A stretch of 64,000 nt of DNA from Hemiscyllium ocellatum (Eukaryota): assembly GCF_020745735.1 (NCBI RefSeq), contig NC_083411.1, positions 87,778,328 through 87,842,327 on the forward strand, written 5' to 3'. Shown here one piece after another: positions 32,137 to 64,000 of the stretch (its first letter is position 1; each line of letters begins with the position of its first letter). The translations under genes and the position numbers were made by a program. The notes beneath the pieces were generated by a model. It saw nothing but the letters and a program-made list of their open reading frames with translations. It had not been told where the DNA came from and did not search any database.

Positions 32137-32342
32137 CAGTTGGGATGATGAGTAGATTCTCAAACTGGCAGGAAGTCATCGGTAAACAAATACTTATAAT
32201 GAAGCAAAGGCCGATAGGAACACTGGATAGGATGGTGTTGGAGAATACTGGAAAATAGAAGCTGACGAAGTGACACATTTTGTTCATTTTTTTTTGCATT
32301 GAACTTATCAGGACAATTCTCAAGAATTCAACATGTATTCAT

Positions 32343-32594: not shown

Positions 32595-33309
32595 AATCAT
32601 GTAAGTTCTACCTCATGGCAATGCCTCTACCAGTCACAGTCTATCTGCAAAATAATCAGCACTCTCCTCTCATGCAGTATGGTTTTATTTTGTTATTCAT
32701 TCACAAGATGTGGGTATTACTGGCTAGAGCTGCATGTATTGCCCAGCCCTGATTGCCCAGTGAACTGTTAAGAATCAACCACATTGCTGTAGGTCTGAAG
32801 TCATAGGTCAGCCAGACCAGGTCAGGATGGCAGATTCTTTCCCTGAAGAACATTAGTGAACCAGATAGGTTTTTCTAAACAATCAATATGGTCATCATTA
32901 GACTTTTAATTCCAGATTCTCCCTTAATTCAAACTTCACCATCTGCCTTGGTGGGATTCAAACCCGGTCTCCAGAACATTACCTGGTTTCTGGATTACAC
33001 CACTTGACCAATGTCTCCCATGAAATGTCCTGATAAGTACAAGATGAAAAGTTTTGACAAAACATTATTTCAGCAATTCTCGAAGTAAAAGTATTCTGTT
33101 TTCATGGTAGAGAATATAAAAATCATTTTAGTAATAGCTGTAAATCGGGGGTGGAAGAGAGAGGAACTTAAAGAGGAATTTATAATCACTAGGGAAGTGG
33201 TACTAAGCATACTGATAGAGCTGTGAATGTAAGACCATTATGACGTAGGAGTAGAAGAAATCATTTGGTTTATTGATTGCACTCCGTCATTCAACGAGAT
33301 AGCTTAATG

Positions 33310-39474: not shown

Positions 39475-40843
39475 CTGTAAAGGACACATGAGAAATGAGG
39501 AATCATCCAAAGACCATAGATGTCATTCCAGTTCAGCTTTCATACAGGAACATCTGCCATTGATCCAAGCTGGTCCTTTTTGGCAGCACAGAATGGAAAG
39601 GAATAACCACTTTCCTCTAGGATTTAATTTTTCAAATACTATTAATGAACTGAACTATGTGATGGAGGTGAAAAGTGTTCTCTTAGTCCATTCTTATGAA
39701 ATTACTGACTTCAGGTTTTAGAAGTGTAAGTGGCCAGTCTCGATACTATGTGACAGGCTGCTGCCATGATTTGGAGGNNNNNNNNNNNNNNNNNNNNNNN
39801 NNNNNNNNNNNNNNNNNNNNNNNNNNNNNNNNNNNNNNNNNNNNNNNNNNNNNNNNNNNNNNNNNNNNNNNNNNNNNNNNNNNNNNNNNNNNNNNNNNNN
39901 NNNNNNNNNNNNNNNNAGGAATATTCAGATAAAATCCTAGAAAACATGACATTTAGCTATTCACATCAGCAACTCCAAATATTCACATTAGCAACTTCTT
40001 TTTTTCAAAAACAGAAAATTATATTGTTAAGTATAAAAGTATGTTATGCTGTTAACCTTTTTGGAAGCTGACAGTCAACTTTTTTGCTTCTTTTTTTTAA
40101 TGAAGGTAATTGCAAAAAAGATATAGTTCAGAGTTGCTAGACAAGTATCTGGAATTGAGAGTGTGGTGCTGGAAAAGCACAGCAGGTCAGACTGCATCCA
40201 AGAAGCAGGAGAACTGATGTTTCGGGCAGGAGCCTTCATCAGGATCATGATTCCTGATAAAGGGCTCTTGCCCGAAATGTCAATTCTCCTGCTCCTCGGA
40301 TGTTGCCTGACTGGATGTGCATTTCCAGTACCACACTCTCGACTGATCTCCAGCATCTGCAGTCCTCAATTTCTCCTAATATCTAGAATTGGTGGGTTAA
40401 CTTATGAGGAAGGGTTGGACAAGCTAAACCGGCATTTGTATTTTTAGATATTGAAGGTGTCGAGGGGTATGAAGAGAAAGTGGGAATAAGGCAATGAGAT
40501 AAAGGATCAACCATGAACATAACAAATGGCAGAGCAGGTTCAAATGGCCAAATAACTGTTTCTTGTTTCTATGTATGTATGTATGTATGTATGTATGTAT
40601 GTATTGTAATAACAAAATGTCAAACACCATATGAAGCTGTTCAATAATATTACAAATAAATTTGCATGACTTTAGTGTCTCAATAAAATTTAACTAATTT
40701 GGGATAAATGATAAAGGGCGAATGATGAGTATCAGACACTTCAAACTAAGCACACTGAAGGAGAAAATGAAAACTTAAATTTCACCTTGTAAGCACTTCT
40801 GTATTTCACAGGCTTGTTTCTGACAGGGGTCTTTAGTAGACAT
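39326..40843 (-). CDS. CMC4: Cx9C motif-containing protein 4 (68 aa)
   Basis: complement(join(39326..39474,40786..40843)); MSTKDPCQKQACEIQKCLQANHYQESRCQHAIEEMHKCCKIYAKTSVCCSGFLKEEEKKSLQISTNCQ*. Matches the recalled human CMC4 start (MPQKDPCQKQACEIQKCLQAN...). An acceptor lies 10 nt upstream of the ATG (exon starts 40853), which implies a non-coding exon 1. Confidence 0.93.
39778..39916. other. Assembly gap (139 N)
   Basis: Run of N inside the CMC4 intron. Confidence 1.
40158..40379 (+). mobile_element. PLE-derived fold-back insertion
   Basis: Inverted arms centred on ATCATGAT (about 40244-40251) with two decayed hammerheads; TSD TATCT(G/A)GAATTG at 40146-40157 and 40380-40391. Confidence 0.8.
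40570..40603. repeat. (TATG)n microsatellite
   Basis: About 8 perfect units. Confidence 0.95.
40786..40843 (-). CDS. CMC4: CMC4 first coding exon
   Basis: ttttcag|gtgctttgctATG TCT ACT AAA GAC CCC TGT...CAA G|gtgaaa. Confidence 0.93.
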
Positions 40844-42369: not shown

Positions 42370-42800
42370 TCTATCTCCCCCCCACGTTAACTCGGGGGGG
42401 GGAGGGAATGTTCCCGGAACCGAGTTGCGAGGCTCGCGCTTGCCGCCCGGCGCCGGTTGTCGGGTCGGTCCCCTCCCCCGTGTTTGTCGGGAAAGGGGGG
42501 GGGGAGAGGATCCGGTTCGGTTTAAAGCGAGCTGAGGGTTTGCCTTCCCCCCGAGCGTTGGGCGGACGATGGCGGTGTGCGGGGTTCACCTGGACTCGGA
42601 TGCGTTCCTCGTGTGTTTAAACCACGCCTTGTCCACCGAGAAGGAGGAGGTGATGGGACTGTGTATCGGAGAGGTACCCACTCGAACCTTCCCTTAGCAA
42701 CCGGGCGGGAGACTGTCACCCTGACAACCCGCCCCCCCCCCTTAGCAACGGGCTGGGCATCGTTACCCCCGGCAACCAGGTCTCAGCATCCCCCCCCTGA
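42370..42800. promoter_or_regulatory. CpG-island bidirectional promoter shared by CMC4 (-) and BRCC3 (+)
   Basis: The strongest CpG/GC-rich island in the window, between divergent genes; a candidate donor for CMC4 non-coding exon 1 lies on the minus strand at 42218 (AG|GTGACA). Confidence 0.75.
42569..42673 (+). CDS. BRCC3: BRCC3 exon 1
   Basis: MAVCGVHLDSDAFLVCLNHALSTEKEEVMGLCIGE|gtaccc. Confidence 0.95.
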
Positions 42801-45800
42801 TGAGGAAGCCTCAGCTTCTGTTTCTCTGAATTGGTGCACTGCCTCAGGATTCGGGTCTGGGTCTGTCAATCCTATCACCAGCACAGGCCCAGCTGGTACT
42901 GTCTGCTGTTCCACTGGAACTAACTCATCACTTCTGCAAGGCGATGCTCTCTACAAGCTGCTGGAGCGCAGCAAAGGTCCCTTTGCCTTAACACTTTAAC
43001 TCTCCCTCCCACTCCACCGAGGACATGCAGGTCCTTGGACTCCTCCACCGGCAAAACATAACAACACGACGGTTGGAGGAAGAACGCCTCATCTTCCGCC
43101 TGGGAACTCTCCAACCACAAGGGATGAACTCAGATTTCTCCAGTTTCCTCATTTCCCCTCCCCCCACCTCGTCTCAGTCGGTTCCCTCAACTCAGCACTG
43201 CCCTCCTAACCTGCAATCTTCTTCCTGACCTCTCCGCCCCCACCCCACTCCGGCCTATCACCCTCACCTTGACCTCCTTCCACCTATCACATCTCCATCG
43301 CCCCTCCCCCAAGTCCCTCCTCCCTACCTTTTATCTTAGCATGCCTGGCACCCTCTCCTTATTCCTGATGAAGGGCTTGTGCCCGAAACGTCGAATTTCC
43401 TATTCCTTGGATGCTGCCTGACCTTCTGTGCTTTAACCAGCAACACATTTTCAACTGTGATCTCCAGCATCTGCAGACCTCACTTTTTATCCCTTTGCCT
43501 TACCCCTTCCTTTGCTGGGGCGTTGACAGAACTCATCAAATTAGTCCTGTCCAGTTAATGTGCACGGATTACTCACTGGGCCGATTGTTCTCTCAATAGA
43601 GCAAATCTCAAAATTCGATATAAATCCAATCCCTGCAGAATTATTGCTTCAGTTCCAATAGGGTACCCGAGCATGAAGATAGGATTTTATTAGTGTTACT
43701 TTCAGGAAATGTTGGTATACAGTGTATGGGTTATCTGAATGTGCCAAGTGCAGGTTGCTTTGGAAGACAAAGTATCATTGAATCTATGCATCCCCCAGCT
43801 CTGCACCACTTGGGTTTTGTTTACATCATGCTATGAAGTAATTCACAGAGTTGCTACAGTGCAGAAGGATGATTTAACCCACTGTGACAGTGCTGGGTCT
43901 CCAGTGGAACAATTTTATGAGCCCCAAATCCCACCTTCTTTTCATGGTCCAGCAATAATTTCAGAATTGTATCCATCATTTTATATTGTCTCTTTGACTT
44001 CTTCCTACCACACTGAATGACATCAGAGTCCTTTGCATGAAATGTCATTGTTTGCCTATACCATCAACCTACTTGTTTTGTCCTGTTGAAGTTCTATAAT
44101 CTCCTCACAAATGTTCAAGTTTTGTATCATCAACAAATTTTTAAATCACTTAACATCAACTCCTGGAGAACTCCAGGTTCCTCCCACAGTCCAAAGGTGT
44201 GTAGATTAGGTGGGTTGGCCATGCTCAATTGCTCATTATGTCTACGTATGTGTAGGTGAGCTATGGGAAATGCAAGGTTACAGGGATAGGGTAAGAGGAT
44301 GAGTCAGTTGGGATGCTCTTGGAGAGTTGGTGAGGACTTGTTGGGCTGACTGGCCTGATTCCATGATGTTGGGGTTCTATGAAACTCTGCCTCTAAACCT
44401 TTCTCCAGTTTGAAAATCATCCATGAACCAATACTGTTTGTTTCAAATTACTCTGCATCTATGTTGTTACTGACCCTTTCATATTGTGAGTTAATTGACA
44501 ACATCACAACATCATTAATGACTGTCAGAAATAATGTACAAATAAAATACAATAGGCTGCCAACTCCAAACGTGTAATCCAAAGTAACCCCTGAATAATT
44601 CAGAAGAAATTTCTTCATATACCTCAAGGCATATTGAAGCAAATAGCGTAGATCTTCAGTATTATAGTTCCAGCAAATATTTTGTCTCGCATTACTTCCA
44701 GCAAACGGATTTGAGCTACCATTATTTCAACAACATGTCAGGGTGTGTTTTTTCCTCACTACTGACTGAACTCAACAAATGAGTAACTCACTGCAGAAAC
44801 TAGCTGTTAGCCATCATTGTTCATAACTGAGAGAAGGGAGAACAAGCTCAGTCACCTAATAGCCACCACACTGTTCTCTTCTTTGCTTCTTGAATCACCT
44901 GGAATGACTCAGCTTTTCCTTGGTAGTTTGCAATTTTGTACTTGTGTTGATAGCTTCATGTTTTGACAGCATTCAGATATTTCACAAGAAAATATAGAGC
45001 TGACTGTGAAAACTGTGTCTTTTAAAGATGAGAAATGGATTCTCAGTTATTTGTTGCAGTACAGCAGTAAATGAGTTCCGGTGTTAATGACAAAAAAAAA
45101 CAGTTTAGGATTAGGGTTGGTTGGAGGTTGTTGGAAGAAGAAGAAAATTAATGAGTGTTTTTATTTTTTTTAGGTTGCATTAGCAATTCTATTCATATTT
45201 AGGCTCCAAGACAGTTGCTCATCAGTTTTTAAAACAAAAACTAATTAAGTTGGTTAAAGCACAATGGTTTCTGGAGACACACCAAAATGCCTTCCATCTG
45301 ATAATGTTTCTATTAAATTTTTTTTAGTAAGGTGAATCGTGTTATCAGCAGGGAAACTGAACACTTTCCATTTTGCTATTCAGTGTCAGCATTTTGTGAT
45401 AGAACATGTATAAAATGCATGTGATACAGAGGTCTCTCTATCCTGCAATTAATTGACCTCTATATACCTCGTACTGTATTGCCCCACTCTAATTTTTTTA
45501 TTTCCATATTGGTCTCCTTTTGAGTATTGCTGAGCAAGGACGTTGTGTTGGAGCATTTCATCTTGTACTCATCAGGGCATTTTACAAGAAGGATCAAAGT
45601 AAAGGGAAATCAACATTTATATCGTATAAATGTAGAGTACTGTTTGGTTGACAAATTGCCTCTGGTAGAGACACTGCCTTGGAGAGGGCACCTATTAATG
45701 ATTGAACATAATTGCCAAGCTTTGTTTAAATGTTTAGACCCGGAAGGTTAACTTGGATTAATCAACGCATTATCCTGAGAAATAAACAAGGGAATGGCAG

Positions 45801-48800
45801 TCACCTATTTTGTTGATTTGATCCTTACAGTTCACTGCAAACACACATTTATGGCCTGCTTAGGACCTCAGGTGATATCCATTTATGCCCGACCTTAATG
45901 CAATTTCCTTGTATGTCCTCATAAGCTCTAGTGTAGTTACTGCAGTTAACTCCCAAGATGATTTCTCTGATTGGAAGAGAAGTTACCAGAGTGCTCTAGC
46001 CAGCTAATCAGCCACTTCCTCAAATTCCATTTAAATATTGTCCTGGTGAGTACAAGATGAAAAGCTTCAGCAACATTTTTTTTCAACAATACACAACTTT
46101 TGTACTACCAAACAGTTATACTCTGTTTGATGCTCACTTTAAAGACCCACTAGAGTCAGTAAAGAGAGATATTCGTCTGTTCCCTCCAGCTGGATGTGAG
46201 AGTATAGAATCCTTACAGTGTGGAAGCAGGCCATTTGGCCCACTGAGTCCATAATGACTCTCCAAAGAGCATCCCACCTCAAACCCCTCCTCCATCTTGC
46301 ATTCCCCATGGCTAATCCACCTAACCTACACATTCTTGGACGAAGGGAGGAAACCAAAGCACCTGGAGGAAACCCATGCAGACAGGGAGAAAGTGTAAAC
46401 TCCACACAGGCATCTCCCTAGTGTGGAATTGAACCCATGTCCCTCACACTGTGAGGCAGAGTGCCAACCATTGAGCCACCATGTTGTCAGGCTCCAGGGA
46501 TAAAGGTTAATGACCTAATTCAGTATGCCATCAGTTCATTTTGACATTGTAGGAAGGAAATAAAGTCAATTAACCTCTCATTTTTTTTTAGGTTGACACA
46601 AGCAGAATTGTTCACATTCATTCTGTCATCATTCTTCGCCGTTCAGATAAGCGGAAGGATCGAGTGGAAATTTCTCCAGAGCAACTTTCTGCAGCATCAA
46701 CTGAAGCTGAGATATCCTTTCAGTTGAGATTTTTATTGAGATTGTATATGATTTCCATAAACTATCATGTTATTGTTAGCAAACAACTGCTGCATTAGTT
46801 ACAATTAGCAGATAATTGTTTCCATCTTTTATCAAGATGAGGCTTCCATGTATGGGAAAGTAAAGTGGATATTAAGTGGAGAGTAAAGCTCCCTCCCTCA
46901 TCAGCTTGTGATACAATTCCACTTAATAGCATGTGTCATTGTACCTGCTCGTGACAAAGCAGACAACTTCCACCCAAAAAAATCCATGGCTTCTGCACAA
47001 ATTCAATGCTAAAATGTCAAAGCTTCTAATGATCTAAATTTGCCCTTTCATGTAGGTTCACACATCCACAAGTACATTGTCCCTCATTTTCATTTCATAT
47101 AGTGCATTTTCATTATTTTATTACTCACCTCCATTATTGTTGTGATAATGCAGTGACTTGATTTTGGTGTTGACTCCTGTTGTTAAACTTTTTTTTCTGC
47201 ATCTATTCTGCTGAATTTCAGACTATCAGAATCAAAAGTCTGGACAAGGAAGATTGTCATTTAAATATCCCAGTGCGGGAGAAACAGTGCAATAATGATT
47301 GTAGTCGCTGAAAATATGTTGTTTAAAAAAAATTGCAATAGTCTATACTTCAGAGATAGAAAGCTGGTGGTGAGTTTAACCAGAAGGTCACCATAACTCA
47401 GGCAGGACCTCCACCCATGGCAACCTCAGCTGATATGGGTATTGAAGCCACAGTGGCGTCACTCTGCATCGTCATTTGGCCATCCTGCCAACTGACACTG
47501 ATGTATAATCATACTGTTGAACTGAGAGTGATGTTGTTCATCAACATCACAAACACCTTCCACCCTGACCTTAAGTTCACTTGAACCATCGCGGACACCT
47601 CTCTTCCCTTCTGGGCCTCTCCGTTTCCCATCTCCGGCAACCAACTCAACACGGACACTTACTTCAAACCCACGAATTCCCACAGCTATCTGTAAAAAAA
47701 CCCTATCCTTTACTCCCAATTCCTCTGCCTCTGCTGTATCTGCTCCAAGGAGGAACAATTCCACTCCAGGACATCCCCGATGGCCTTCTATTTCAAGGAC
47801 TGCAATTTCCCCTCCTACATGATCAAGAATGCCTTTCAGCACATCTCCACTTCCTGCACTTCCGCCCTTGAACCCCAGCCGTCCAACCACAACAAGAATA
47901 GAAGCCTCCTGATCCTCACCTTCCACTCCACTAATCTCTGTATACAGATCATTACCCTCCACCATTTCCGCCACCTACAATCAGACCCCCCCAACCAGAG
48001 ATATATATTCCCTTCCCATCCCTGTCTGTGTTCTGCAGAGACCATTCCCTCCATGACTCCCTCATTAGATCCATGCTCTCCATCAACACACCTTCTGATC
48101 CTGGCGTCTTCCCTTGCCACTACAAGAGGTGTAAAACCTGCGTCCGTACATCCCCCTCACTTCCATCCAAGACCCCAAAGGATTTTTTCAGATCTGGCAG
48201 AGATTTTTTTGCACATCCAAACACCTCATCTACTGCGTCCGTTGCTCTCGATGTCTCTTCTACATTTCAGGGAACATCTCTGGGACATGCACCAAACAGC
48301 CCCAATGCCCTATGGCTGACCACTTCAACTTCCCCTCCCACTCCACCAAGGACATGCAAGATCCGGGCCTCCTCCGCCAAATCCAAGCCACTGACAACTA
48401 GATGAAGAACGCCTCATCTTCTGCCTGGACCTCCCAACCACACGGCATCAAAGTCAACTTCACTAGTTTCCTTATTTCCTGTTCCCCCACCTCATCCCAG
48501 ATCCAAGCCACCAACTTGGCACTGCCCTCTTGAACTGTCCTATCTATCCATCTTCCTTCCCACCTATTCCGTCCACCCTCCCCTCCGACCTATCACTGTC
48601 ACCCCCCACCTCCATCTACCTATCGCCTTCTCAGCTACCATCCCCCCCCCCCCCCCCCCCCCCAAGCCCCATTCATCTCTCAGCTACCCCCACGTTTCTG
48701 ATGAAGGGCTTATGCCTGAAATGTCAACTCTCCTGTTCCTCTGATGCTGCCTGACCTGCTGTGCTTTCCAGCGCCACACTTTTTGACTCTGATCTTCAGC

Positions 48801-51800
48801 ATCTGCAGTCCTCACTTTCTCCTAGTAATCTATAGCCTACACCCTAACATACTGATTATGGGGAGGTGATGGCCTAGTGTTCTATTGCTGGATTGTTAAT
48901 CCATGGACTGAGGTAATGTTTTGGGGACCCAAGTTTGAATCTGACCATAGCAGATGGTGAATTTTGAATTCAATAAAAAAAATCTGGAAACAAGAGTCTC
49001 ATGATGACCATGTTGATTGTCAAGAAAAATACATCTGGTACACTAATGTCCTTTAGGGATGGAAATCTGCCATCCTTCCATGGTCTGGCCTACATGCAAC
49101 TCCAGATCCACAGCAACGTGATTGACTCTTAACTGCCCTCTGAGCAATTAGGCATGATCAATAAATGCTGCCCTTGCCAGATATGACCATTTTGTGAATG
49201 AATAAAATAAAAATTACATCGGTTTGAGTCCCACTGCAACAATGGTTCGATCTGAATTCACAACAAATCTGGAATTAAAAAGCTAGCAAGCATGTAAGCA
49301 TCAGAAATACCCATTTCGTTCAGTAATGCCCTTTTGGGAGGGACAACTGTCATCCCCACCTGGTCTGGCCTATACATGACTCCAATTCTTGGCAATGTTC
49401 TTGGCTCTTAACTGTCCACTAGCTGGCCACTCAGTACAAGAGTAATTAGGGATAGGCAAGTAATGCTTGCTCAACCAGCAATGCCCACATCCCATGAACT
49501 AGTTTTTGTTTTAGAAAATAAAAAACATTGTCTTTAGAGAATTTGCTTCATAAACAGGAAACCAAAGAAGGTGATCTACTTCCAAATTGACATCCCACTC
49601 CATCTCCATCTAACTGTGACCCCGAAATTCATGGTTCTAGATAAGCTCATAACAATGTTCACTCTGTACATGCGTTTTTAAGTTAGATGCAAAATAAAAT
49701 TTGCTAGGAGGCAAAAAGTAAAATTTCCCTCTGTGCTGCTGTATCAAAATATGATACAGGCAAATTTAAACATTTCTTTGCCCATTCAACTGAAAGGTAC
49801 ATGGACAAGATAAGAATTTTTTTTTTAAACAATCATAATATACTTTCACAACGTTATTTTTCTGTATTATTTAGATTAGGAGAAGTTCACATATTTTGTT
49901 GGTTTGATGTCAGAAGTTTCTGGTGAGGATTGCAATTCATTGGCTTTGTGGGTTTGCAGTGTTCTGGGAAAAATGCATCACCTGAAGGTTATGTACTAGA
50001 GATTTCAATTACATACAATCTTTGACGACTTGCACAGGTTAGCTGAAATAACGGGTCGCCCAATGAGAGTGGTAGGATGGTATCATTCTCACCCTCATAT
50101 CACTGTATGGCCTTCACATGTAGGTAAGTGTGTGACTGAACTGGGTGCGTGTCAAGTAATAGTGGAGTTAATGTAACATATGTGAGCAGTTTAAAAGAGT
50201 AGAAATCCCTTGTGAGCAGTGACTTTTGTCCTGTTTGCTCCTGATAGTAAACAAGATAAAAAAATCAACAGTGTGTAATGAATTTAAAATGCTAACTTTA
50301 TTAACACTATCCCATGTGTTTTCAGACCATTTTTTTTAATGATTAGATTACTAACAGTGTGGAAACAGGCCCTTCAGCCCAATAAGTCCACATCGACCCT
50401 CTGAAGAGGGACCCACCCAGACTCATTCCCCTACATTTACCCCTTCACCTAACACTACGGACAATTTAGCATGGCCAGTTCACCTTTTTGGACTGTGGTA
50501 GGAAACCAGAGCACCCGGAGGAAACCCACGCAGACACAGGGAGAATGTGCAAACTCCACACAGACAGTTGCCTGAGGTGGGAATTGAACCCGGGTCTCTG
50601 GCGCTTAAGGCAGCAGTGCTAACCACTGTGCCACCATGCCGCCCGCCATTTGACTGTTGAAGGCATCATGCCTGACCTCAGTTGTATTTTCACTGGTTGA
50701 TCATGGCAGGTGTTGTAGTGACTATAACATGGTCAGCCAGGTGGACCTCATAAAAAATGAGTTCCCTGATTGGAGCTGTTAACATTACCCTTCCTCCCTG
50801 GTTTTGTGATTTCAAATTCTTTTGGAGTCCGTTTTCTACACTGTCTGTGTGGAGTTGGCACATTCTCCCTGTGTCTGCATAGGTGTCCTTTGGGTGCTCC
50901 AGTTTCCTCCCACAATCCAAAGATGTACAGGCTAGGTTAGTTGGCCATGCTAAATTGCCCATCGTGTTCAGGGATGTGTGGGTTCGGTGCATTAGTCGGG
51001 TAAATTTAGAGTGGTAAGGGAATAGGTTGGGCAGGTTGCTCTTCGGAGGGTCGGTGTGAATTTGTTGGACCAAATAGCCTATTTCCGTACTGTAGAGATT
51101 CTCTCTGAAGAAAGGAGTCAAATTATTAAAGAGACATTTGGATATTTTAATAGGGGAGCTATGAGCTCTGTAAACTGAGAGGCCTTTCACATTTGTATTT
51201 AGTATTTTGGATGATTTACATCTACCCCTAAGCCATAAGAGAGCATTTTCATGCAACATACCTACCTGTGACCTGTTGTTTAGTTTAATTCTGTTTAAAA
51301 AGGAACAAGATTGTTTGCTGTTCACTGTGTGTATGATAGACATTTTTACTTGGGCTTTTCCAATGATTTTCTATGGGAGATACACCTCCCTGTTATGGTG
51401 GCTGATGGGATCTTAGGTTTTTGGACAAAATAAGAATGCACCTTGCCATTAAAATTTGAGTTATGTCCAAATGTGCCACTTCAGATCATCAATGTTAAGC
51501 TCTCTTCATTGAAATAATTTAGAGTCCATTTTAGTTTCCTTGCTAGTGCAGTTAATATGGAGTAGTTTGTCAAAGAAGCAAAGCTTGATCAATACCATTC
51601 TAAACCTGCTTTTTTGTCTGTCAGATGTCCGTACTCAGGCCATGTATCAGATGATGGACCAAGGCTTTGTAGGGTTGATCTTCTCCTGTTTCATTGAGGA
51701 CAAAAACACAAAGGTCTGTACCTCTCTATTTTATTGTGTGTTCATTCTTTTGATGGCATTTCATGGTGGTTTAATACTTCCTCATAGTGGGGTGAGGGAA

Positions 51801-54800
51801 AATCTCTGGGGCTGATTTTCCCCATTAGTAGTTAACAATTATGTGCAACTTTTGTGGGACAGGCCAAATTGATAAATCTGAGTCAATGACATCCTGAAAT
51901 GGAAGTATATTACCATTCCTTCACTATTACTAAAAACATCTACCTAACAGCCCTGACTGTGGTTGTTTTAAAAAGGCAAATCACCAGCATATTGTCTAGG
52001 TATATAGTAACGGCCAAAATACAGACCTTGCCATGGTTATCCACATACTTTGAATGAATTTTTAAAAATCCAAACTAGAGAGACTACTATCTGTTGCACC
52101 AGTGATATGTTTTCAATTCCCAGACAGTGCTGCCTTTTTGCCTTGATGTGTGTAAATGCCAATTTGCTATGACTTATCAATAATTTTGTGCTGTGAACAT
52201 TGATTGAAACCACTCCAAGCTAATTTTGTTCCTGCAATTTTACAGCTGTCAGAGGGAAACATCACATTTATCCCTTCAGTCTGGCTTAGATTTAATTACA
52301 TAACCAAAAAATGAGAGAGAGATTTTCTAACTCATATTATGGAAAGTTCCAGAGCAAGGCTAATTGAGGTCTCAGTGCTCCTTGGCAGACCTATTAGAAT
52401 TTTAAGAAACAGTATGCTTATTTGAATAGTTAATTAATAAATTACACCCAGATTTCACAGTAGCTCCTATCATAAAAGCCCAGTTTCAAGGGCTTGCTGG
52501 TTATATTAAGAGATCAATAGAAAATTAGGTGACACCATTAAACAAATACATTTTACCTTTTTATATGTTTTCTTCAGACTGGCCGAGTTCTCTATACCTG
52601 TTTTCAGTCAATTCAGGCACAGAAAGGTTCTGAGTAAGTATAATGCAGCCTGTTATTCTGGTGAAAACAATATAAAGGGTTTTTTAATATGAAGTGATGA
52701 ATTTTGTTATTATGGGGAAATAGTGAATGGAAAGCTTGCAAAGTTTCCCCATCCATGCATATATCCTTACACATGTTTGATTACTTTTATGATAGGTTGG
52801 GATCTGATGGCTATCAATCTCTGCCATGGTTTGAACTTTGTATGAGTTAATTAATTGGAGAAAACTTCAAGATAGAGATTTATGCTCAAAATTAATCAAT
52901 AGTGGATAGGCCTATAATTTAATCTGGGATCATACAAACACCATAAACTAAGATAATAGGTTAGGAGGTCATCTGAATGTCATTAACCTTTTGGTAACTT
53001 GGTTCCAGGTATGAACGAATAGAAATCCCTATCCATGTAGTGCCCCATGAAACTATTGGTAAAGTGTGTCTGGAGTCTGCTGTGGAACTTCCAAAAATCC
53101 TTTGTCAAGAGGAGCAGGATGCTTATAGAAGAATTCACAGGTAAAGTAAGAAATGATATGCATTTTTGTGTTTGAGGCATTAATTAATTAGTGAATTGGT
53201 AGAAATAGTGGAGGTCCAAAGAAACTTTGGTTTCAAACTGTACACAAAATCAGAATGTCATGAACATATACAGAAAGTAATCAAAAAGGCTATTGAAATG
53301 TAGGTCTTTATATCAAGAGGATGAAGGAACTAAGCTCTGGTTGGATCGAACTTGGAGTACTGTAAACATTTCTAAGCATAACACATTAGGAAGAACATAT
53401 AATAGCCTTGGAGGGACTGCAACATAAACTTATTAGAATGATATCTGGAACTGCAGAAGTTAAATCATGAGGGTATGTTATACAATCTGGTTGTGTTTCC
53501 AGAATTTAGAAGGTTAAATGTTGATTTGATGGAACTTTACAAGATAGTAAGAGGGCCAGATTGAGTAAGTTGAGAGAAACAAATTCTGGTAGTTGGAGAA
53601 TGTTGAGCTGGGCATTAATCAAAAATTAGAATCAAAACTGTCAGGTCTGAAATTAACAAACATTTCTTCATGCAAAGGGTGACAGAAATTTGCTAAATGC
53701 TATTATACAACTACTATTAATGGTAGATCAAAATAGTTGTCTGTAGTCCACAGGGGACCATAGCCATCTCTTTATGGTAGAGAGACACAATTGATCATAT
53801 AGCTTGAAGATACCTCTCTGCATCAAACATGGGGTAAAGTGAAGAGGCAGAGTCATGAATTTCCACAGCTCTTAGAGGAAATGAATCTGCACCATTGACA
53901 TTTAGCTAACTATGCCAACCAATTCTCACAGGTCGATTGAATATTAATTGTAAATCTGGGTATGATCAATTTTTGTTAGCCAGAAACATTAAAGGATATG
54001 GTGTAAAATCCATGTGCTGTTGTCAATGAAGTCATGTAATTTTGTTGCTACCATTTTATCCTTTGAACACATGATCATTATAGAGAGAAAATACTGAGGT
54101 CGTAGCTGTAAAAGAATCTCCATTACAGTGTAGACTGAAGGATATCAATGTATTTCCACCCCTGTAAAATTGATTTGTATAGTGGTTTTGTTAATCAATT
54201 GGTTCTGCTGATTTGATTTTTAAAAAAATCTAAACATTTGTACTTAAAATTCTTTGTTTTCCTTTTTACAGTACTGTATTTGACAGGCAAACAATATAAT
54301 GCCAGAATAATAATACTCCCTTTGGCACCTGACATCACTATCAAGAACTTAAAAATATGCACAATATGTGTCAGATATTTTTCCCCAACAGTGTGCCAAA
54401 CCAAGGCTTAAAAGAGAACGATCTTCGCAGACTACTCATCTATATAATTTACCTTAAACTGAAATTAGTCTGGAGTTGAATCTAAATCTGCATCAGATTT
54501 TGTATTTGTTTGACTGAACCTAAGTAAATATTTTTTCTCAAACTTCATGCTCACATATGAACTTGAATTTGCCAAACCCAATTTATTTAAGACTTTTGAA
54601 GAACCTCAGACTGGTTAAACTTTGAATCCCTTGGAGAGGTGAAAGAGCAGCCAACAGTCCAGTTTTACATCCAATCTTTTCGTTCTTCATGATGACCAAT
54701 GTTGCGCTTCTTGTTTATTTGCAGCATTTTAATTTTAAATGATATAATCAAAACCACTACACTTCAAAGAAATACTACAAGGCTGTAACTAACACATTGT

Positions 54801-57454
54801 TGTCCACATCAACAAAGGATTTTTCATAATGAAATTCCTATGCTTTTCTCAGAATATTTTAGTTGAAGCCATTACTTGGATGGTGTTCTTGATCTCATAC
54901 AGTGGCATTTGACCTTGAGATAAAGGAGTAGAATTGGGTCATTCAACTCTCAAGTCTGCTCTGCCATTTGATCATGACTGATATGTTTCTGACCATCATT
55001 CTCCTGCCTTCTCCCTGTAACCTTCAATCCCCTTACTAATAAAGAACCTACATATCTCTGATTTAAATACAGTAACAGTGCTGTAACAGGCACAAGCAAC
55101 AGTTTTATTTATCATCTCTTATGCATACAAGTATGAGTCATTCCTCCACATGAGAGCAGAAAATTCAATTAATTTATTGTTCCTTATTCAAATTCCCAAT
55201 TTAAATTTACTTTGCAGTGTTTTTATTCATTCATGGGGTGTGGGTCTCACTGCCTGGCCAGCCTTTATTGCTCAGCCTTTTATGGGAGGCAGTGGCGTTA
55301 TGGTAATGTCACTGGGCTAGTAACCTCGAAGTCCAGGCTAATTTCCTAGGGATATTTGTTTGAATCACACCAAGACAGGTGTTGAAATTTGAACTCAATA
55401 AATGTCTGAGATAATAGAGTTGGTTTAATCACTGTTGATTGTTGTAAAACACATCTGGCTCGTTAATGTCCTTTATGGAAACAAATCTGCCGTTGGTGCC
55501 TGGTCTAGCCTAAATGTGACTTCCGACCCAAAACAATTGGTTGACTCTTAACTTCCCTCTAGGCTATTAGCGATGACCTATAACTACTGCCCTAGCTAGC
55601 AATACCCACATCCCACAAACAAATTTAAAATGATATTAGTTGCCCCTTGGCAGCTCCTTTATTGAGCCCTCTATTTGGTATAGGTACCAACAAATTGCTG
55701 TAGGGAGAGAGTTCCAGGATTTTGACTCAAAATCCTATTATTGGAAACAGAATAACCATTGTCAAGTGTTTTAGTAGATTCATCTGTGATCTTCCCTGTT
55801 TTTGGTATGGATAAAATTTGTTAATCTAGTTCACATCTTGTTAACAATGTTTGCTTGTATTCAACAGAAGGTTGAAATAAACAAAATCTGTGATCTTTTA
55901 TCTTTTGTTTCAGCCTTACACATCTGGACCCTATAACCAAGATTCACAATGGATCAGGTAGATTATGGCTCACTGTCTCCTTTTTGGAGAAAATAATATA
56001 CACACTATACCAGAAGAGTATAGTTGAAAGCTCACATTTTTGATCCTAATGAGTGCTGGTAAAACAGTTAAAGAACAAGCTATAGGGAACTCTGTGGAAA
56101 TCAAAGATAGCCATTTCACAGATGAACTGTTTTTTTCATTCCTCTGTGTTTATAAAAGGTTTTTGCAAAAAAAAAACTGTGTTTCACTGATTTAAAAGAC
56201 AGAATTACAGGAGAAAGCGCAGAGAGATGTGACATTTAACACTTGCCATTGGTGACCTTTGAGCTTTGTATTGGGGGAGGTGGAAAATGCTAGCTTTCTG
56301 TGTGGAATACAGGAATTATATTTCGAGGTGCAAGAGAAGAATAATTAGTGGGAAGGAAATTTCAGGAGTTCAAAATTTTTCAGGATGTTGTCTTTCTGAC
56401 TCAGCTCCTCATCACCCCCTGAAATGCACATGCCAATAGTGAGGTTAGCACAGGTAAAGAAATTCTATTTTTTTTTCTTGTATACCACTCTTGTTGAATT
56501 TCATTTTGTGCAGCATTAGAAAAGGTACACCTAAAAGTAACAAACACGTGGTTAGGAATTTCAGTGGCAATTTGAGCAGAGCGATACGAACAGAGGAAGA
56601 AATGTTACCAGGATTGAAATAGGTGCATTTTGTGATGGATGTGGAATGTGAGAAGGTTCTGAGGTTGTGCACCATAACGTGCAAAATCTGTGTTGTGAAA
56701 CAGATGATTTTTTTTCCTCACGAACAAATTGATTCAGTAAATTTATTTGATTTTAAAGGGCAGTATTACAGAGGTTAGCTTTCCGTTAGCTCAAAACAGA
56801 AAGAAGAGTTGACAAACCTGTTCAGGAATTCCAAAATCTGGCTAACTTTGTTATTGTCTGCTTTCCAACAAATTGTTTTGCAGGCCTATTATTAAATAAA
56901 TTGCAATAGGTGAATTAAAAGGGGGCAATGGGAAGGGGAAGAGGTATCTTATGCAAAAGCAGACAATTTATATCCTATCCAGTATTCCCATTTAATATTT
57001 ATTTGTTCAAAAATAAATGATAAGAAATGTGAGCAAACTGGCTCAACATCGCCCTAGATGTAAACAAATTGAGTAATTTCTGCATCTTTTTATAAGGACA
57101 GGCTACATTTGGGTTGTGAAAATTTTAGTTAAGATTTTCATTTGCACTTATTTGCTCTGAATTAGTCACATGTTTCTACGATTTGATATTTATGTTTTGG
57201 ACGCAGCAATATTCATTTATGTAGAATATATCCAATGTGGTTTTAAACATTTTAAAATACCCTGACTGACCAATATCTGCATATTCATTTTCATTTCTCT
57301 AGTTTTCACAAAGAATCTGTGTAGCCAGATGTCATCCATTAGTGGTCCTCTGCTACAGTGGCTGGAGGATCGTCTTGATCAGAACAAACAGCACATCCTG
57401 GAACTTCAGCGGGAGAAGGAACAGCTCCTCCAAGAACTTGCGGCCTTAAAGTGA
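42569..57454 (+). CDS. BRCC3: Lys-63-specific deubiquitinase BRCC36 (8 exons, 261 aa)
   Basis: join(42569..42673,46592..46711,50036..50123,51625..51713,52578..52633,53009..53140,55914..55957,57303..57454) = 786 nt. Intact JAMM/MPN+ motif WYHSHPHITVWPSHVD, EEVMGLCIGE, and a C-terminal coiled-coil region. Confidence 0.96.
42991..43489 (+). mobile_element. Penelope-like 3' fragment
   Basis: [30 protein letters not shown] (GIY-YIG C-terminus) and a hammerhead; perfect TSD TCCCTTTGCCTTA at 42978-42990 and 43490-43502. Confidence 0.88.
43361..43396 (+). ncRNA. Minimal type-I hammerhead ribozyme (PLE)
   Basis: AUUC-CUGAUGA-A-GGGC(UUGU)GCCC-GAAA-CG-UC-GAAU. Confidence 0.8.
44175..44382 (+). mobile_element. 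HE1-like SINE 3' part
   Basis: ttcctcccacagtccaaag..ggccatgct..ttctatga tail. Confidence 0.7.
45520..46100. mobile_element. Old inverted pair of PLE-like 3' ends
   Basis: CTG(A/G)TGAGTACAAGATGAAA(A/T)GCT motif on - at 45547-45580 and on + at 46038-46074; related copy at 33025-33062. Confidence 0.5.
46205..46484 (-). mobile_element. HE1-like SINE
   Basis: Homologous to 7146-7457. Confidence 0.78.
46592..46711 (+). CDS. BRCC3: BRCC3 exon 2
   Basis: VDTSRIVHIHSVIILRRSDKRKDRVEISPEQLSAASTEAE, followed by the U12 donor ATATCCTTT. Confidence 0.95.
47534..48822 (+). mobile_element. Decayed Penelope-like element (RT C-terminus, linker, GIY-YIG, 3'UTR)
   Basis: TNTFHPDLKFT-like RT end, RDHSLHDSLIRS..PGVFPC..KRCKTC, and a decayed hammerhead at about 48694-48728. 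Confidence 0.82.
48862..49500 (+). mobile_element. Two tandem copies of a second tRNA-derived SINE family
   Basis: aatgtcctttaggga..aaatctgccatcctt..tggtctggcctacatg..actcca..gactcttaactg; further copies at about 32695-33015 (-) and 55290-55625 (+). Confidence 0.65.
50036..50123 (+). CDS. BRCC3: BRCC3 exon 3
   Basis: RLAEITGRPMRVVGWYHSHPHITVWPSHV|gtaagt. Confidence 0.95.
50340..50644 (-). mobile_element. HE1-like SINE
   Basis: Near full-length copy, homologous to 7146-7457. Confidence 0.85.
50840..51102 (+). mobile_element. HE1-like SINE (5'-truncated)
   Basis: V-domain tgtggagttggcacattctccctgtgtctgc. Confidence 0.78.
51625..51713 (+). CDS. BRCC3: BRCC3 exon 4
   Basis: DVRTQAMYQMMDQGFVGLIFSCFIEDKNTK. 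Confidence 0.95.
52578..52633 (+). CDS. BRCC3: BRCC3 exon 5
   Basis: TGRVLYTCFQSIQAQKGSE. Confidence 0.95.
53009..53140 (+). CDS. BRCC3: BRCC3 exon 6
   Basis: YERIEIPIHVVPHETIGKVCLESAVELPKILCQEEQDAYRRIH. Confidence 0.95.
53170..53720 (+). mobile_element. Highly decayed CR1 3' fragment
   Basis: ttggagtactgt..tttagaaggttaa..gatttgat..tttcttcatgcaaagggtg. Confidence 0.6.
55914..55957 (+). CDS. BRCC3: BRCC3 exon 7
   Basis: SLTHLDPITKIHNGS. Confidence 0.95.
57303..57454 (+). CDS. BRCC3: BRCC3 exon 8 (stop)
   Basis: VFTKNLCSQMSSISGPLLQWLEDRLDQNKQHILELQREKEQLLQELAALK*; AATAAA at 58421 and 58901. Confidence 0.95.
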
Positions 57455-60400: not shown

Positions 60401-62239
60401 ACCTATTCTAAATAATGTTGATTCAGAGATAACTGGTGCATGGTACCAGAATCGCTTCCTTGACTTTTTTTTAAACAAAGTGCCACAAAGTCTCTCATGT
60501 TAAGGTGAGAGTGCAGACTGGCTCTAAAAGACAGCAACCTTGGAGCTTGACTGAATATGGCTGGATTGTTAGCGTTTGCTGTCACTACTCCGCTGAAATT
60601 GATATCAACCTCCCAAGATTACAGATGTATAGCAAACCTGTAAGTCTGGAGATTCAATTCATTGTGAGTGGTTCTATGCTAACCCTGAGAGTGGGCTACT
60701 GAAGGCAGTTAGATACCACTGAACTATCTTGAAATTCTGCTGTATATTCTTAGACTCCTGAATGCCCCAATTCTAATAAATTCTACCTTTTAAACATGTT
60801 TTATTAGCTTGTTTTTGACTTTATTTTAATCTCGTCTCCATGTCCAATCTATCACAATTTTTCTATTTTAATGTATGTAAAAATTTTAAAAGCAAAGATA
60901 TTTTTAATTTCCTGGTTTGCAGATTGTGGGAATACTTGGCTATTTGTCCTGTTTTCTGACATCGCTGGTGCTAGGATGCTTGGAGATTCCTATGATATGA
61001 TGCAAAATTCAAGCTAACCTCGGGCAAGAGAATGTCTGTGCCATGTAAGTTGCTAGATCTGCTCGGATAATTTTTTTCAAGGTCAGAAAACATAACTAAA
61101 GAACAAAAAGGAACAAAGAACTAGGAGGACCTCAAAAATAAAAACACAAATTGCTGGAAAATCTTAGCACATCTGGCAGCATCTGTGGATAGAAAGCAGA
61201 GTTAATGTTTTGATTCAGTGATCCTTCTTCAGGATTACCACTGCTTCACTGTTGGCTGCAAAATCCAGCTCAGTTTGTTACTAGAGAATCCCACTGGATT
61301 TGATCTTAAATCACCAAAAGCCATTCACAAAAACAAAGTCAAGATTAGGCCCAGATTATCATTTGACTGAGCTTCTTCATTTGCTATTAGTAGGACCTTG
61401 CTATGTACAAATTGGCTGCTACATTTTCCAAAGCACAACGTTTTTGTATTTAAAAAGCTGCTTTTAAAGTATTAACACGCCATAATAAAATCCGTTCTGC
61501 AAATTCATTCATTAGCTTTCTTTAAGAGATGGAAGAAAGTTATAAACTTTGAATATTTTTAATTACCAGTTGAATGCAGCAATAAAAGATGCAAGGTATT
61601 AATGTTTAAAATTTCAATGTCCTTGAATGTTTTTCATTACACCATCATTTGATCTGTTTTAGTCATCTTTGAGCTTATTATGTATCATCAGCTGTCTTAA
61701 ATCACAATAAGCATTGGTAGAGGTTACCATGGCATCTTGCTATTGTAGGGTATGCAAATAATTCCCTCTGACCAAAAGAATAAAATATTTTATAATTGCT
61801 AATTCCTTGTACCCAGCAAAATAGAATAATCCTGGCAAGTTAAAATGGTACAGTTGTTATGTATGGTTGAAACAGTGTCATTAGCATACAGCTATTATAA
61901 GCTCTCAACAATGTAATTTTTGAGATATATGCTGATTCTTGCTATTAACATGTAAATCTGCTAGGTCTATATTTCTATACAGAGCAATTAGATAGCTCTG
62001 CTTACATTAATTTGCACAACAATGAACTCTCAAGTATTTTAGCAAGTTGTTTCATTAACAGCTACAAGAAAGGTAATTTCATGTTTTTTTGTACCATTTT
62101 AGCCTTACTTTTACAATTCATGCTCATACACACTTACATTTGATTCTCATCTTTGATTCTTCACATGAAATAATAAATAAGTAATCCATAACAACCTTGT
62201 CAATGGTCCCTCCTCTTGAGCAAGCAGGAGACATCACAC

Positions 62240-62429
62240 ATACACAGATAAAAGAGGTACGCCTGTGTCGGTCAGTTTAACAGATGAAGAGATGCAGCCT
62301 AGACTGTACAACTTGATTTAGTTACAGCCTAGAACCAAACACAACAGATTGTATAAAGGTAAAAGAAATAATCAAATAGCCATATTCAGGAGCATCTGCA
62401 CAAAAGGCAGGTGAAAACTGACGGTGAAA
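62240..62429 (+). promoter_or_regulatory. TATA-containing promoter and 5'UTR of the MAO-like gene
   Basis: TATAAA at 62352 about 75 nt upstream of the ATG; AGATAA (GATA) at about 62246. Confidence 0.45.
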
Positions 62430-62478
62430 ATGTCCAGTGGAAAACAAGATGTGGTCATCATTGGAGGGGGCTTGTCGG
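62430..62478 (+). CDS. Flavin-containing monoamine oxidase-like gene, first coding exon (gene continues beyond the window)
   Basis: aaaATG...: MSSGKQDVVIIGGGLS(G)|gtgagt. FAD-binding GxGxxG motif with a phase-1 intron at the position recalled for MAOB exon 1 (MSNKCDVVVVGGGISG). TATAAA at 62352-62357. Confidence 0.75.
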
Positions 62479-63099
62479 GTGAGTGTTTTCTAATTCTACC
62501 TTTCAGTTGTGTCTTTCCCCCAAGTTGTCAGCACAATGTACGATTCCAGCTCTAAATACAAAGGAAAAGCAGCTAATGCTTTCTGAATGAATGCATTATG
62601 CCCGAGGATAATAATTTAGGAAGCAATAAAGTGGATTTCGGTCATCCTACATTTGTAGATAATGGAGTTTAACATATATGAAAATGTGTGAAAATGTATG
62701 ATACTGTAGAATTTAATCATGATTTCTGAAAAAAATATTTTCTTCCAAATTATTTGAATAACATTTAAAAGGAAAATGCTTTGATTTTTAAGTACTTTAG
62801 TTCTTATTTAGAATACAGACTTCATATATGTGGGAGCTACACATACCATTGTATTGATCTATGCATTACAAGAAGACAATTATCTGCAGTGTTCTGTTCG
62901 AAGCAGAACTACAAACAATTGGTGTGCTATCAGAACATGTTACAGCAAGCACACATTCTATACAGATGTTTTATTTATTGTCTTCCCAATTATGATGTGT
63001 ATTTTCACAAAATCTATGGATCTTCAGACTAATCCCTTCTGTACTCCATTCCCAGCAAGGCAACCTTTTCTCACTGTTCAAGCATACAGTTACTTTATT

Positions 63100-63825
63100 A
63101 GATTGAGTGTTGCAAGTCACTGTTCTTGGTCCCCATTCCAAACACCATCCTCTTGCTGACAACAGTTTAAGATCAAACAAATATCTTTGCTACCTTGGTA
63201 CCATATTTGACCCTGAGATAAGTTTCCAACCAAACTGCCATGCTATCATTAAGGAAGCGTATTTCCCCCCCCACCCTGCCCCCAGTCACCAAATCTCACC
63301 CCTGTCTCATCTCATCTCATCTAATGCTGAAAACCTCAACTGTACCTCCGTTATATCTCGCTTGATAATTTCAGTGCACTGCTGCCTGATTATAGTCATC
63401 CAGATTCTGTTATGTACATCTTGTAGCAAATCCTTGTGACAGCTCACTGGCCTCTACTGGATCCTGATCAAGTCATGTCTTGATTTTAAAATATTCATCT
63501 TTGCTTTCAAATTCTTCCATGAATCCTAGCCCCAATTGTCAGCAGCATAGCTATTCAAGATATCTGTTCCAATAGCTATTCTAATTCTGACCTCTTGTGC
63601 ATCCGTGATATGAACATCTCATTATTGGTGGCTGAGTCTTCAATTGGCTATCTCCCTTTCCTTTAAGACACTATTTAAATCCTCCTGCTTCAACCAAGCT
63701 TTTGTTCATCTGATATCTATCATCTTCCTATGTGGTTCAATGTAATATTTTGAAGTTCAAAGCTTATGGGATGTGTCGTTGTGTATTTTATTACATTAAA
63801 AGGCTGCTTATAAATAAAAGATTGT
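63100..63825 (+). mobile_element. Decayed L2-like LINE 3' end
   Basis: LGTIFDPEISFQP..AYF..ENL..SVISRL; tail aaaggctgcttataaataaaagattgtt; a similar fragment lies at about 14600-15010. Confidence 0.6.
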
Positions 63826-64000
63826 TCTTTTTAGGTTAGAATTTGGCTCCAGATTACAGTCTCTTGTATGAAAGAAAAATGTCAAGAAAATATTGTGGAA
63901 ATGAAGTGAACTTCAGGAGGACTTCAGGAGACTCTAGTCTGCTTCATGAAGATTTAAACAGCTTGTAGAAAATGTAAACATTTCTATTGAATCATTATGG

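What the first reader, a model, noticed from the sequence alone, without database searches (positions are those of the whole stretch)
62240..64000. Monoamine-oxidase-like gene directly downstream of FUNDC2-CMC4-BRCC3: candidate retained MAO ohnologue
Seen: a TATA box, an ATG and an exon encoding MSSGKQDVVIIGGGLS(G) ending in a phase-1 GTGAGT donor, 5 kb after the BRCC3 stop. Known: in human, MAOA/MAOB lie beside NDP-EFHC2-FUNDC1 (Xp11), while FUNDC2-CMC4-BRCC3 (Xq28) is followed by VBP1 with no MAO; MAOB exon 1 has this motif and intron phase. Inference: this is a further vertebrate MAO lineage from whole-genome duplication, sitting in the FUNDC2 paralogon, kept in cartilaginous fish and lost in mammals. 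It would show an ancestral FUNDC-MAO linkage. Only 16 codons are visible.
Basis: partly seen in the sequence, partly recalled or inferred. Interest (0 to 1): 0.75.

Follow-up and report, generated by a model that had tools for sequence, protein, structure and literature searches.

The report
First exon of shark MAO F

Summary
The ATG is at 62430. It is followed by 16 codons (MSSGKQDVVIIGGGLS) plus one base, then a GTGAGT donor at 62479 (phase 1). This lies 4,975 nt after the BRCC3 stop, on the same strand.

The peptide alone does not identify the family: its best match among solved structures is a bacterial protoporphyrinogen oxidase. Context identifies it.
- The window aligns in the same order with the annotated BRCC3-to-MAO locus of the shark Heptranchias perlo.
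- Exon 1 is 47/49 nt identical to Heptranchias, against about 65% in the flanks.
- The donor is at the same base in Heptranchias and in the ray Narcine. The Narcine protein starts with the identical 17 residues.
- Those proteins are the ones classed as MAO F by Merello Oyarzun et al. (Genome Biol Evol 2025, PMC11833248). That paper reports MAO F flanked 5' by CMC4 and BRCC3, present in non-tetrapod jawed vertebrates and lost in the tetrapod ancestor.
- My tree separates MAO F from MAO A/B with 100% SH-aLRT support.

Exon 2 lies 5.8 to 9.4 kb downstream in the relatives, so it is beyond the window's end. The gene's integrity in this genome is therefore inferred.

An origin by whole-genome duplication is plausible (FUNDC1 and FUNDC2 are strict ohnologues) but not proven here.

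The parts
62430..62478 (+). First coding exon of MAO F. It encodes MSSGKQDVVIIGGGLS plus the first base of a Gly codon. This is the N-terminal strand and most of the GxGxxG loop of the FAD-binding Rossmann fold.
   Evidence: Searches give the sequence. It is 47/49 nt identical to Heptranchias exon 1 and 44/49 to Narcine. The 17 residues are identical to Narcine MAO F and 14-16/17 identical to the other elasmobranch MAO F proteins.
62479..62484 (+). Splice donor GTGAGT, intron phase 1.
   Evidence: The donor is at the same base and phase in Heptranchias (GTGAGT), Narcine (GTATGT) and a teleost MAO A/B gene (GTAGGA).
62479..64000 (+). The start of intron 1. The window ends before exon 2.
   Evidence: No further MAO exon is found in the window. 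Intron 1 is 5.8 kb in Narcine and 9.4 kb in Heptranchias. No repeats or conserved blocks were detected in it.
62313..62340 (+). Conserved upstream block TTGATTTAGTTACAGCCTAGAACCAAAC, a candidate promoter or 5'-UTR element.
   Evidence: It is nearly identical in Heptranchias (TTGATTTAGTTGCAGCCTGGAACCAAAC) while the surrounding sequence is about 65% identical. It is not conserved in Narcine. Its function was not tested.
62352..62357 (+).
   Evidence: It is present, but the aligned positions in Heptranchias and Narcine are not a TATA box. This is weak evidence of a promoter.
42569..57454 (+). BRCC3, the upstream neighbour. Eight coding exons are visible and the stop is at 57452-57454.
   Evidence: Exon translations are. 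A library search with the exon at 52998-53141 returned BRCC3 proteins.
40785..40843 (-). CMC4 first coding exon (approximate limits), head-to-head with BRCC3.
   Evidence: The translation MSTKDPCQKQACEIQKCLQ is on the - strand. Identification rests on the motif and on recalled CMC4 sequence only.
19752..19826 (+). One FUNDC2 exon (approximate limits).
   Evidence: The translation [23 protein letters not shown] is on the + strand. Identification rests on the motif and on recalled FUN14-domain sequence only.

Best explanation
Window 62430-62478 is exon 1 of this shark's orthologue of MAO F. MAO F is the second monoamine oxidase gene of non-tetrapod jawed vertebrates. The exon supplies the start codon and the first beta-strand and glycine loop (DVVIIGGGLSG) that bind the ADP part of FAD. 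It splices in phase 1 to an exon 2 that must lie beyond the window's end. In relatives, exon 2 encodes GLSAAKLL...VLEARDRVGGR.

By homology, the full product would be a protein of about 520 residues anchored in the outer mitochondrial membrane. It would oxidise monoamines (tyramine, dopamine, serotonin, phenethylamine) to imines with covalently bound FAD and release H2O2.

Shown here: the exon, its splice site, its position, and its orthology to annotated MAO F genes. Inferred: that the rest of the gene is intact and expressed in this genome, and its enzymology, which was measured only for tarpon MAO F.
For: 1. Sequence. The ATG, 16 codons and a phase-1 GTGAGT donor are present.

2. Orthology by position. 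Window 56.5-62.9 kb aligns in the same order with Heptranchias perlo locus L002 positions 170-10539. That stretch runs from the last BRCC3 exon into the annotated MAO gene, whose coding sequence starts at L002:10001. In Heptranchias and Narcine, a BRCC3 gene (JAB and BRCC36_C domains) ends 6.8 and 7.3 kb upstream of an Amino_oxidase gene on the same strand. In Carcharodon the gap is 3.5 kb.

3. Selective conservation. Exon 1 is 47/49 and 44/49 nt identical, against about 65% in the flanks. The donor is at the same base.

4. Protein. Narcine MAO F begins with the identical 17 residues. Pristis, Heptranchias, Heterodontus, Chiloscyllium and Pristiophorus differ by one residue. The 21 elasmobranch MAO F N-termini share 14-17 of the 17 residues; the best MAO A/B-type sequence shares 13. 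Leu in GGG-L-SG occurs in 31/31 MAO F sequences, while 68/70 A/B-type sequences have Ile.

5. Family. These proteins include the accessions that PMC11833248 lists as MAO F: XP_032886353.1, XP_043560518.1, XP_038631965.1 and XP_048400495. My own tree splits 19 MAO F sequences from 21 MAO A/B and tetrapod sequences with SH-aLRT 100. [quoted passage not shown]

6. Literature. MAO F is flanked 5' by CMC4 and BRCC3 in bony fish, and the 5' synteny is kept in cartilaginous fish. Tarpon MAO F localises to mitochondria, binds FAD, is active on all six amines tested, and is inactivated by clorgyline but not by deprenyl.
Against: - Only 49 coding bases are in the window. The other roughly 14 exons, the Amino_oxidase domain, the covalent-FAD cysteine and the C-terminal membrane helix cannot be seen.
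- The peptide alone is not diagnostic. Its best match among solved structures is Bacillus protoporphyrinogen oxidase (E 0.68), and no MAO is in the top five.
- The TATA box is not conserved.
- No expression data were available.
- The window's species was not identified, so its own annotation could not be consulted.
Confidence: 0.92

Rival explanations
1. The exon is a surviving relic. MAO F has decayed or been lost downstream in this particular species, leaving an intact-looking first exon.
For: Nothing beyond exon 1 is visible. MAO F has been lost in whole lineages, namely tetrapods. Several shark gene models lack a proper exon 1 or are truncated, although that looks like annotation error.
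Against: The exon keeps its ATG, reading frame and consensus donor. It is 96% identical to Heptranchias while the flanks are about 65% identical. Every cartilaginous fish listed has an MAO F gene.
Confidence: 0.05
2. It is the first exon of a different FAD-dependent flavoprotein, such as a protoporphyrinogen, polyamine or L-amino-acid oxidase. Its N-terminus would then resemble MAO only because it carries the generic Rossmann motif.
For: The 17-residue peptide alone matches a bacterial protoporphyrinogen oxidase best among solved structures. GxGxxG N-termini are widespread.
Against: The collinear alignment places it on exon 1 of the annotated MAO F gene of Heptranchias. The 17 residues match MAO F at 16-17/17. 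Intron position and phase are shared with MAO genes. No other flavoprotein gene is called between BRCC3 and MAO F in three relatives.
Confidence: 0.01
3. It is a chance open reading frame in intergenic DNA.
For: It is only 49 nt long, and short ORFs abound here.
Against: tblastn E values are 2e-5 to 3e-4 against the 64-kb window. The exon lies at the syntenic position with a conserved donor.
Confidence: 0.01

Closest known systems
MAO F (Merello Oyarzun et al., Genome Biol Evol 2025, PMC11833248). The characterised member is Megalops cyprinoides XP_036404314.1. Cartilaginous fish members include Scyliorhinus canicula XP_038631965.1 and Amblyraja radiata XP_032886353.1.
   Same: The genomic position is the same, directly 3' of CMC4-BRCC3 on the BRCC3 strand. 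The N-terminus is the same (MSSGKQDV[IV]IIGGGLSG in elasmobranchs), as are the exon 1 length and the phase-1 donor. Leu in the GGGLSG loop is shared.
   Different: Nothing differs in what can be seen. Only exon 1 is available, and this species' full protein was not recovered. The tarpon N-terminus is longer (MDKTQKPEAPKTDVIILGGGLSG).
MAO A/B of fishes, and MAO A and MAO B of tetrapods (human structures 2BXR and 1GOS).
   Same: They share the fold and the GxGxxG start. Intron 1 is at the same codon position and phase in a teleost MAO A/B gene. [quoted passage not shown]
   Different: They form a different clade (SH-aLRT 100). Shark MAO A/B starts MTSDKCDVIIIGGGISG, only 12/17 identical to the window. 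Ile replaces Leu in the loop in 68/70 sequences. They sit at a different locus: beside GPR82 according to PMC11833248, and near NDP-EFHC2-FUNDC1 by my recollection of the human map. In Heterodontus they are on a different chromosome from MAO F.
Protoporphyrinogen oxidase (Bacillus subtilis, 3I6D).
   Same: Its N-terminus MSDGKKHVVIIGGGITG is the best match to the 17-residue peptide among solved structures.
   Different: The resemblance is limited to the generic Rossmann start. There is no synteny and no shared gene structure. The orthologous full-length proteins are MAOs.

Membership tests
MAO F (vertebrate monoamine oxidase F lineage) | The gene lies directly 3' of CMC4-BRCC3, on the same strand as BRCC3. 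| tested here: met
   The BRCC3 stop is at 57452-57454 and the ATG at 62430, both on the + strand. The same arrangement is seen in Heptranchias, Narcine and Carcharodon and is described in PMC11833248.
MAO F (vertebrate monoamine oxidase F lineage) | Orthology of the exon to exon 1 of annotated MAO F genes. | tested here: met
   There is a collinear blastn alignment to L002. Exon identity is 47/49 and 44/49 nt. Protein identity is 14-17 of 17 residues to elasmobranch MAO F, against 13 or fewer to A/B-type sequences.
MAO F (vertebrate monoamine oxidase F lineage) | Placement of the protein inside the MAO F clade in a tree. | tested here: inconclusive
   Seventeen residues are too few for a tree of the window's own protein. 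The positional orthologues (Heptranchias P0198, Narcine P0195) fall in the MAO F clade with SH-aLRT 100.
Monoamine oxidase / flavin amine oxidase (Pfam PF01593 with PF13450) | An N-terminal dinucleotide-binding GxGxxG motif after a hydrophobic strand. | tested here: met
   DVVIIGGGLSG is at 62448-62480.
Monoamine oxidase / flavin amine oxidase (Pfam PF01593 with PF13450) | Intron 1 splits the last Gly codon of GxGxxG in phase 1. | tested here: met
   This holds for the window, for Narcine and Heptranchias MAO F and for Gambusia MAO A/B.
Monoamine oxidase / flavin amine oxidase (Pfam PF01593 with PF13450) | The Amino_oxidase domain, the SGGCY covalent-FAD cysteine, the aromatic-cage tyrosines and a C-terminal membrane helix. 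| not testable with these tools
   These lie in exons outside the window. They are present in elasmobranch MAO F proteins, for example SGGCYTAYFPPG and WSGYMDGAV in P0081, P0085, P0086 and P0090.
Monoamine oxidase / flavin amine oxidase (Pfam PF01593 with PF13450) | Amine oxidase activity and mitochondrial localisation. | not testable with these tools
   These were measured only for tarpon MAO F.
Protoporphyrinogen oxidase | Full-length similarity or synteny with PPOX genes. | tested here: not met
   Only the generic N-terminal motif matches (E 0.68). The orthologous proteins are MAOs.

The most novel reading that the evidence does not exclude
MAO F and MAO A/B would be ohnologues from the second vertebrate whole-genome duplication. 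Each would have been carried on a duplicated block that already contained a FUN14-domain gene, and perhaps a GPR34-type receptor, next to the single ancestral MAO. The present arrangements would then be FUNDC2-(CMC4-BRCC3)-MAO F-GPR34-like and GPR82/GPR34-MAO A/B-...-FUNDC1.

The MAO F paper does not discuss the mode of duplication. The supporting evidence is circumstantial:
- FUNDC1 and FUNDC2 are strict ohnologues.
- In eel, a FUN14 gene lies 6 kb from MAO F.
- In Narcine, a GPR34-like gene lies 9 kb past MAO F. In a dozen other cartilaginous fishes and a sturgeon it sits on a contig of the same length as that species' MAO F contig, which I take to be the same chromosome.
Probability: 0.6. 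Interest if true: 0.3.

Novelty: already known. Interest (0 to 1): 0.15.

Why it matters
It matters little as a discovery. The gene lineage, its synteny with CMC4-BRCC3, its loss in tetrapods and its enzymology were published in January 2025.

The case has three smaller uses.
- It shows that a 16-codon exon plus synteny sufficed to predict MAO F correctly.
- It marks the true first exon. Several shark genome annotations (great white, starry smooth-hound, basking shark, epaulette shark) appear to miss or replace it.

Tried and rejected
- Peptide against solved structures. The result was non-diagnostic, with PPOX on top, so the family cannot be called from the peptide alone.
- Earlier notes of this scan. 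There was nothing on MAO, FUNDC2 or BRCC3 in this genome, only unrelated QSOX notes that call the genome a shark.
- Identifying the window's species.
  - It is neither Narcine nor Heptranchias: blastn identity is 64-72%.
  - The substitute first exons of the Carcharodon, Mustelus and Hemiscyllium gene models are not in the window.
  - An attempt to build a BRCC3 query from the window's exons gave a bad alignment (A2) and was dropped.
  - I ran no further search on this.
- Neighbours of MAO A/B. In Gambusia and Heterodontus no gene lies within the 10-kb flanks. The FUNDC1-MAO A/B linkage therefore rests on recalled human map positions and on the paper's GPR82 statement.
- Weak tblastn hit at 2327-2437 on the - strand (35% over 37 residues). 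It contains a stop and is noise.
- GPR34 tree. It shows one lineage that follows the species tree, so it cannot separate orthology from hidden paralogy. It was not pursued further.
- Repeats in the visible part of intron 1. None were found.

Full report
**Observation.** The sequence is as described.
- The ATG is at 62430.
- The frame reads MSSGKQDVVIIGGGLS, followed by one G. GTGAGT is at 62479-62484, so the intron is in phase 1.
- An in-frame TGA sits 21 nt upstream of the ATG.
- TATAAA is at 62352-62357.
- BRCC3 is on the same strand. Its exon 1 starts at 42569, the JAMM-motif exon is near 50.1 kb, and its stop is at 57452-57454. The ATG is therefore 4,975 nt past the stop.
- A CMC4 first exon lies head-to-head with BRCC3 near 40.8 kb on the - strand. 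A FUNDC2 exon lies near 19.8 kb on the + strand.
- The window contains one masked N run (39778-39916). I left it alone.

**The peptide alone does not name the family.** I searched the 22 stop-free residues around the exon against all solved-structure sequences. The best match was a Bacillus protoporphyrinogen oxidase N-terminus at E 0.68, and no MAO was among the five hits.

**How I reached the relatives.** The exon is too short for the protein search tools, so I searched the representative library with a BRCC3 exon (window 52998-53141). One hit, P0003 from Acipenser sinensis, is a gene model that runs from BRCC3 exons straight into an MAO sequence starting GLSAAKLL. That is itself evidence that the two genes are neighbours in a sturgeon.

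I used the MAO part of P0003 as a query. The top hits were 'amine oxidase [flavin-containing]-like' proteins of sturgeons, gar, bichir, eel, tarpon, coelacanth, lungfish, sharks and rays. They scored ahead of all MAO A, MAO B and ordinary fish MAO proteins. Listing the cluster members showed that they include the accessions given as MAO F for Amblyraja, Chiloscyllium plagiosum, Scyliorhinus canicula and Stegostoma in Supplementary Table S1 of PMC11833248, where the column is headed 'MAOC'.

**N-termini.** Narcine bancroftii MAO F begins with the identical 17 residues. Pristis, Heptranchias, Heterodontus, Pristiophorus and both Chiloscyllium species differ only by V9I. Over all hits with an intact start:
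- The 21 elasmobranch MAO F sequences share 14-17 of the 17 residues with the window.
- The best MAO A/B-type sequence shares 13. Shark MAO A/B (MTSDKCDVIIIGGGISG) shares 12.
- The loop reads GGG-L-SG in 31/31 MAO F sequences and GGG-I-SG in 68/70 A/B-type sequences.

**Orthology by position and gene structure.** I fetched the MAO F loci of Narcine (L001) and Heptranchias perlo (L002).
- In both, a BRCC3 gene (JAB plus BRCC36_C domains) ends 7.3 and 6.8 kb upstream of the MAO F start codon on the same strand. Carcharodon shows BRCC3 3.5 kb upstream of its MAO F model.
- The window is neither Narcine nor Heptranchias. It aligns collinearly with Heptranchias from the last BRCC3 exon through the intergenic region into exon 1 (window 56583-62942 to L002 170-10539, at 64-83% identity).
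- Within that alignment the 49 coding bases are 47/49 identical to Heptranchias and 44/49 to Narcine. The GT donor is at the same base.
- Exon 2 (residues 17-48, GLSAAKLL...VLEARDRVGGR) lies 5.8 kb downstream in Narcine and 9.4 kb in Heptranchias. Its absence from the 1.5 kb of intron in the window is therefore expected.
- A teleost MAO A/B gene (Gambusia, L003) has intron 1 at the same codon position and phase.

**Promoter.** The TATAAA is not conserved in either relative. A 28-nt block at 62313-62340 is nearly identical in Heptranchias.

**Family placement.** A maximum-likelihood tree of 40 full-length proteins splits the 19 MAO F-type sequences from 21 MAO A/B and tetrapod MAO A and MAO B sequences with SH-aLRT 100. 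The MAO F side separates cartilaginous fishes, ray-finned fishes and lungfish; the MAO A/B side separates cartilaginous fishes, ray-finned fishes, coelacanth and tetrapods. The tree is unrooted, because no lamprey or outgroup sequence was among the hits. [quoted passage not shown]

**What is known.** Merello Oyarzun et al. (Genome Biol Evol 2025;17:evae280, PMC11833248) report the following.
[quoted passage not shown] - It is flanked 5' by CMC4 and BRCC3 in bony fish, with the 5' synteny kept in cartilaginous fish.
- It arose by duplication in the jawed-vertebrate ancestor and was lost in the tetrapod ancestor.
- Tarpon MAO F goes to mitochondria and purifies as a yellow FAD protein.
- It oxidises all six tested amines, with kcat values comparable to the human enzymes.
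- It is inactivated by clorgyline but not by deprenyl, so it behaves more like MAO A.

The mechanism I assign to the shark gene is taken from that work by homology.

**The part not in the paper.** The paper does not mention whole-genome duplication, ohnologues or FUNDC genes.
- FUNDC1 and FUNDC2 are 'strict' ohnologues in the Ohnologs database, with nine paralogous gene pairs between their regions on human X (PMC5526904).
- In Anguilla, MAO F lies between a factor VIII-like gene and a 150-residue FUN14-domain gene 6 kb away. This matches the gene order I recall for human Xq28 (F8 next to FUNDC2).
- In Narcine, an intronless GPR34-like receptor lies 9 kb past the canonical MAO F stop. In twelve other cartilaginous fishes and in Huso, the GPR34-like protein sits on a contig of the same length as that species' MAO F contig. 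Tetrapod MAOA lies beside GPR82 (paper text); that GPR82 and GPR34 are adjacent is my recollection.

A quick GPR34 tree follows the species tree and cannot separate orthology from hidden paralogy. The FUNDC1-MAO A/B linkage therefore rests on my recollection of the human map (MAOA-MAOB-NDP-EFHC2-FUNDC1 at Xp11.3). The whole-genome-duplication reading is plausible, at about 0.6, but it is not shown.

**Limits.**
- Only exon 1 is in the window.
- The species was not identified.
- I have no expression data.
- Whether this genome also has MAO A/B is inferred from other cartilaginous fishes: Heterodontus (on a different chromosome), Hemitrygon and Callorhinchus.

**Verdict.** Interest is low.

Noticed in passing
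L001:69188-70225 (-), Narcine bancroftii, outside the window: An intronless 346-residue 'GPR34 like' receptor lies 9 kb past the canonical MAO F stop. Its best match among solved structures is GPR34 (E 5e-64). In 12 other cartilaginous fishes and in Huso, the orthologue sits on a contig of the same length as that species' MAO F contig. This echoes GPR82/GPR34 beside MAOA in tetrapods and may be a third gene pair of a duplicated block.
   Followed up: partly
L005 (Anguilla anguilla): 1-3188 (-) and 26575-28878 (-): Eel MAO F lies between a factor VIII-like gene (Cu-oxidase plus F5_F8_type_C domains, 1751 residues) and a 150-residue FUN14-domain gene 6 kb downstream. This is a direct FUN14-MAO F adjacency in an Xq28-type neighbourhood. 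I did not check whether the FUN14 gene is fundc2 rather than fundc1.
   Followed up: no
P0003 (Acipenser sinensis hypothetical protein FKN15_060567): This public gene model fuses BRCC3 exons to MAO F from exon 2 onward. It is probably a read-through annotation error, but it shows that the two genes are adjacent in a sturgeon.
   Followed up: partly
P0214 (Carcharodon), P0208 (Mustelus asterias), P0215 (Hemiscyllium), P0213 (Cetorhinus): These public shark MAO F gene models lack the canonical MSSGKQDV... first exon. They have substitute first exons, a fused N-terminus or a truncation. The conserved exon seen here suggests these are annotation gaps.
   Followed up: no
window 40785-42700: CMC4 (- strand) and BRCC3 (+ strand) first exons lie about 1.7 kb apart, head-to-head. 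The G+C-rich stretch just downstream (51% G+C at 42-44 kb) suggests a shared bidirectional CpG promoter.
   Followed up: no
window 43000-43600 and 47575-48750: Long stop-free, proline-rich translations recur in BRCC3 introns, with motifs such as PPTPPRTC and HSTEDMQVLGLLH. They look like copies of a dispersed repeat and were not classified.
   Followed up: no
window 30000-36000: This stretch has a strong G-over-C skew (up to +0.36) and raised G+C. Parts of it match, at 66-68% identity, repeats found in the Narcine MAO F locus. It is probably a transposable-element cluster.
   Followed up: no
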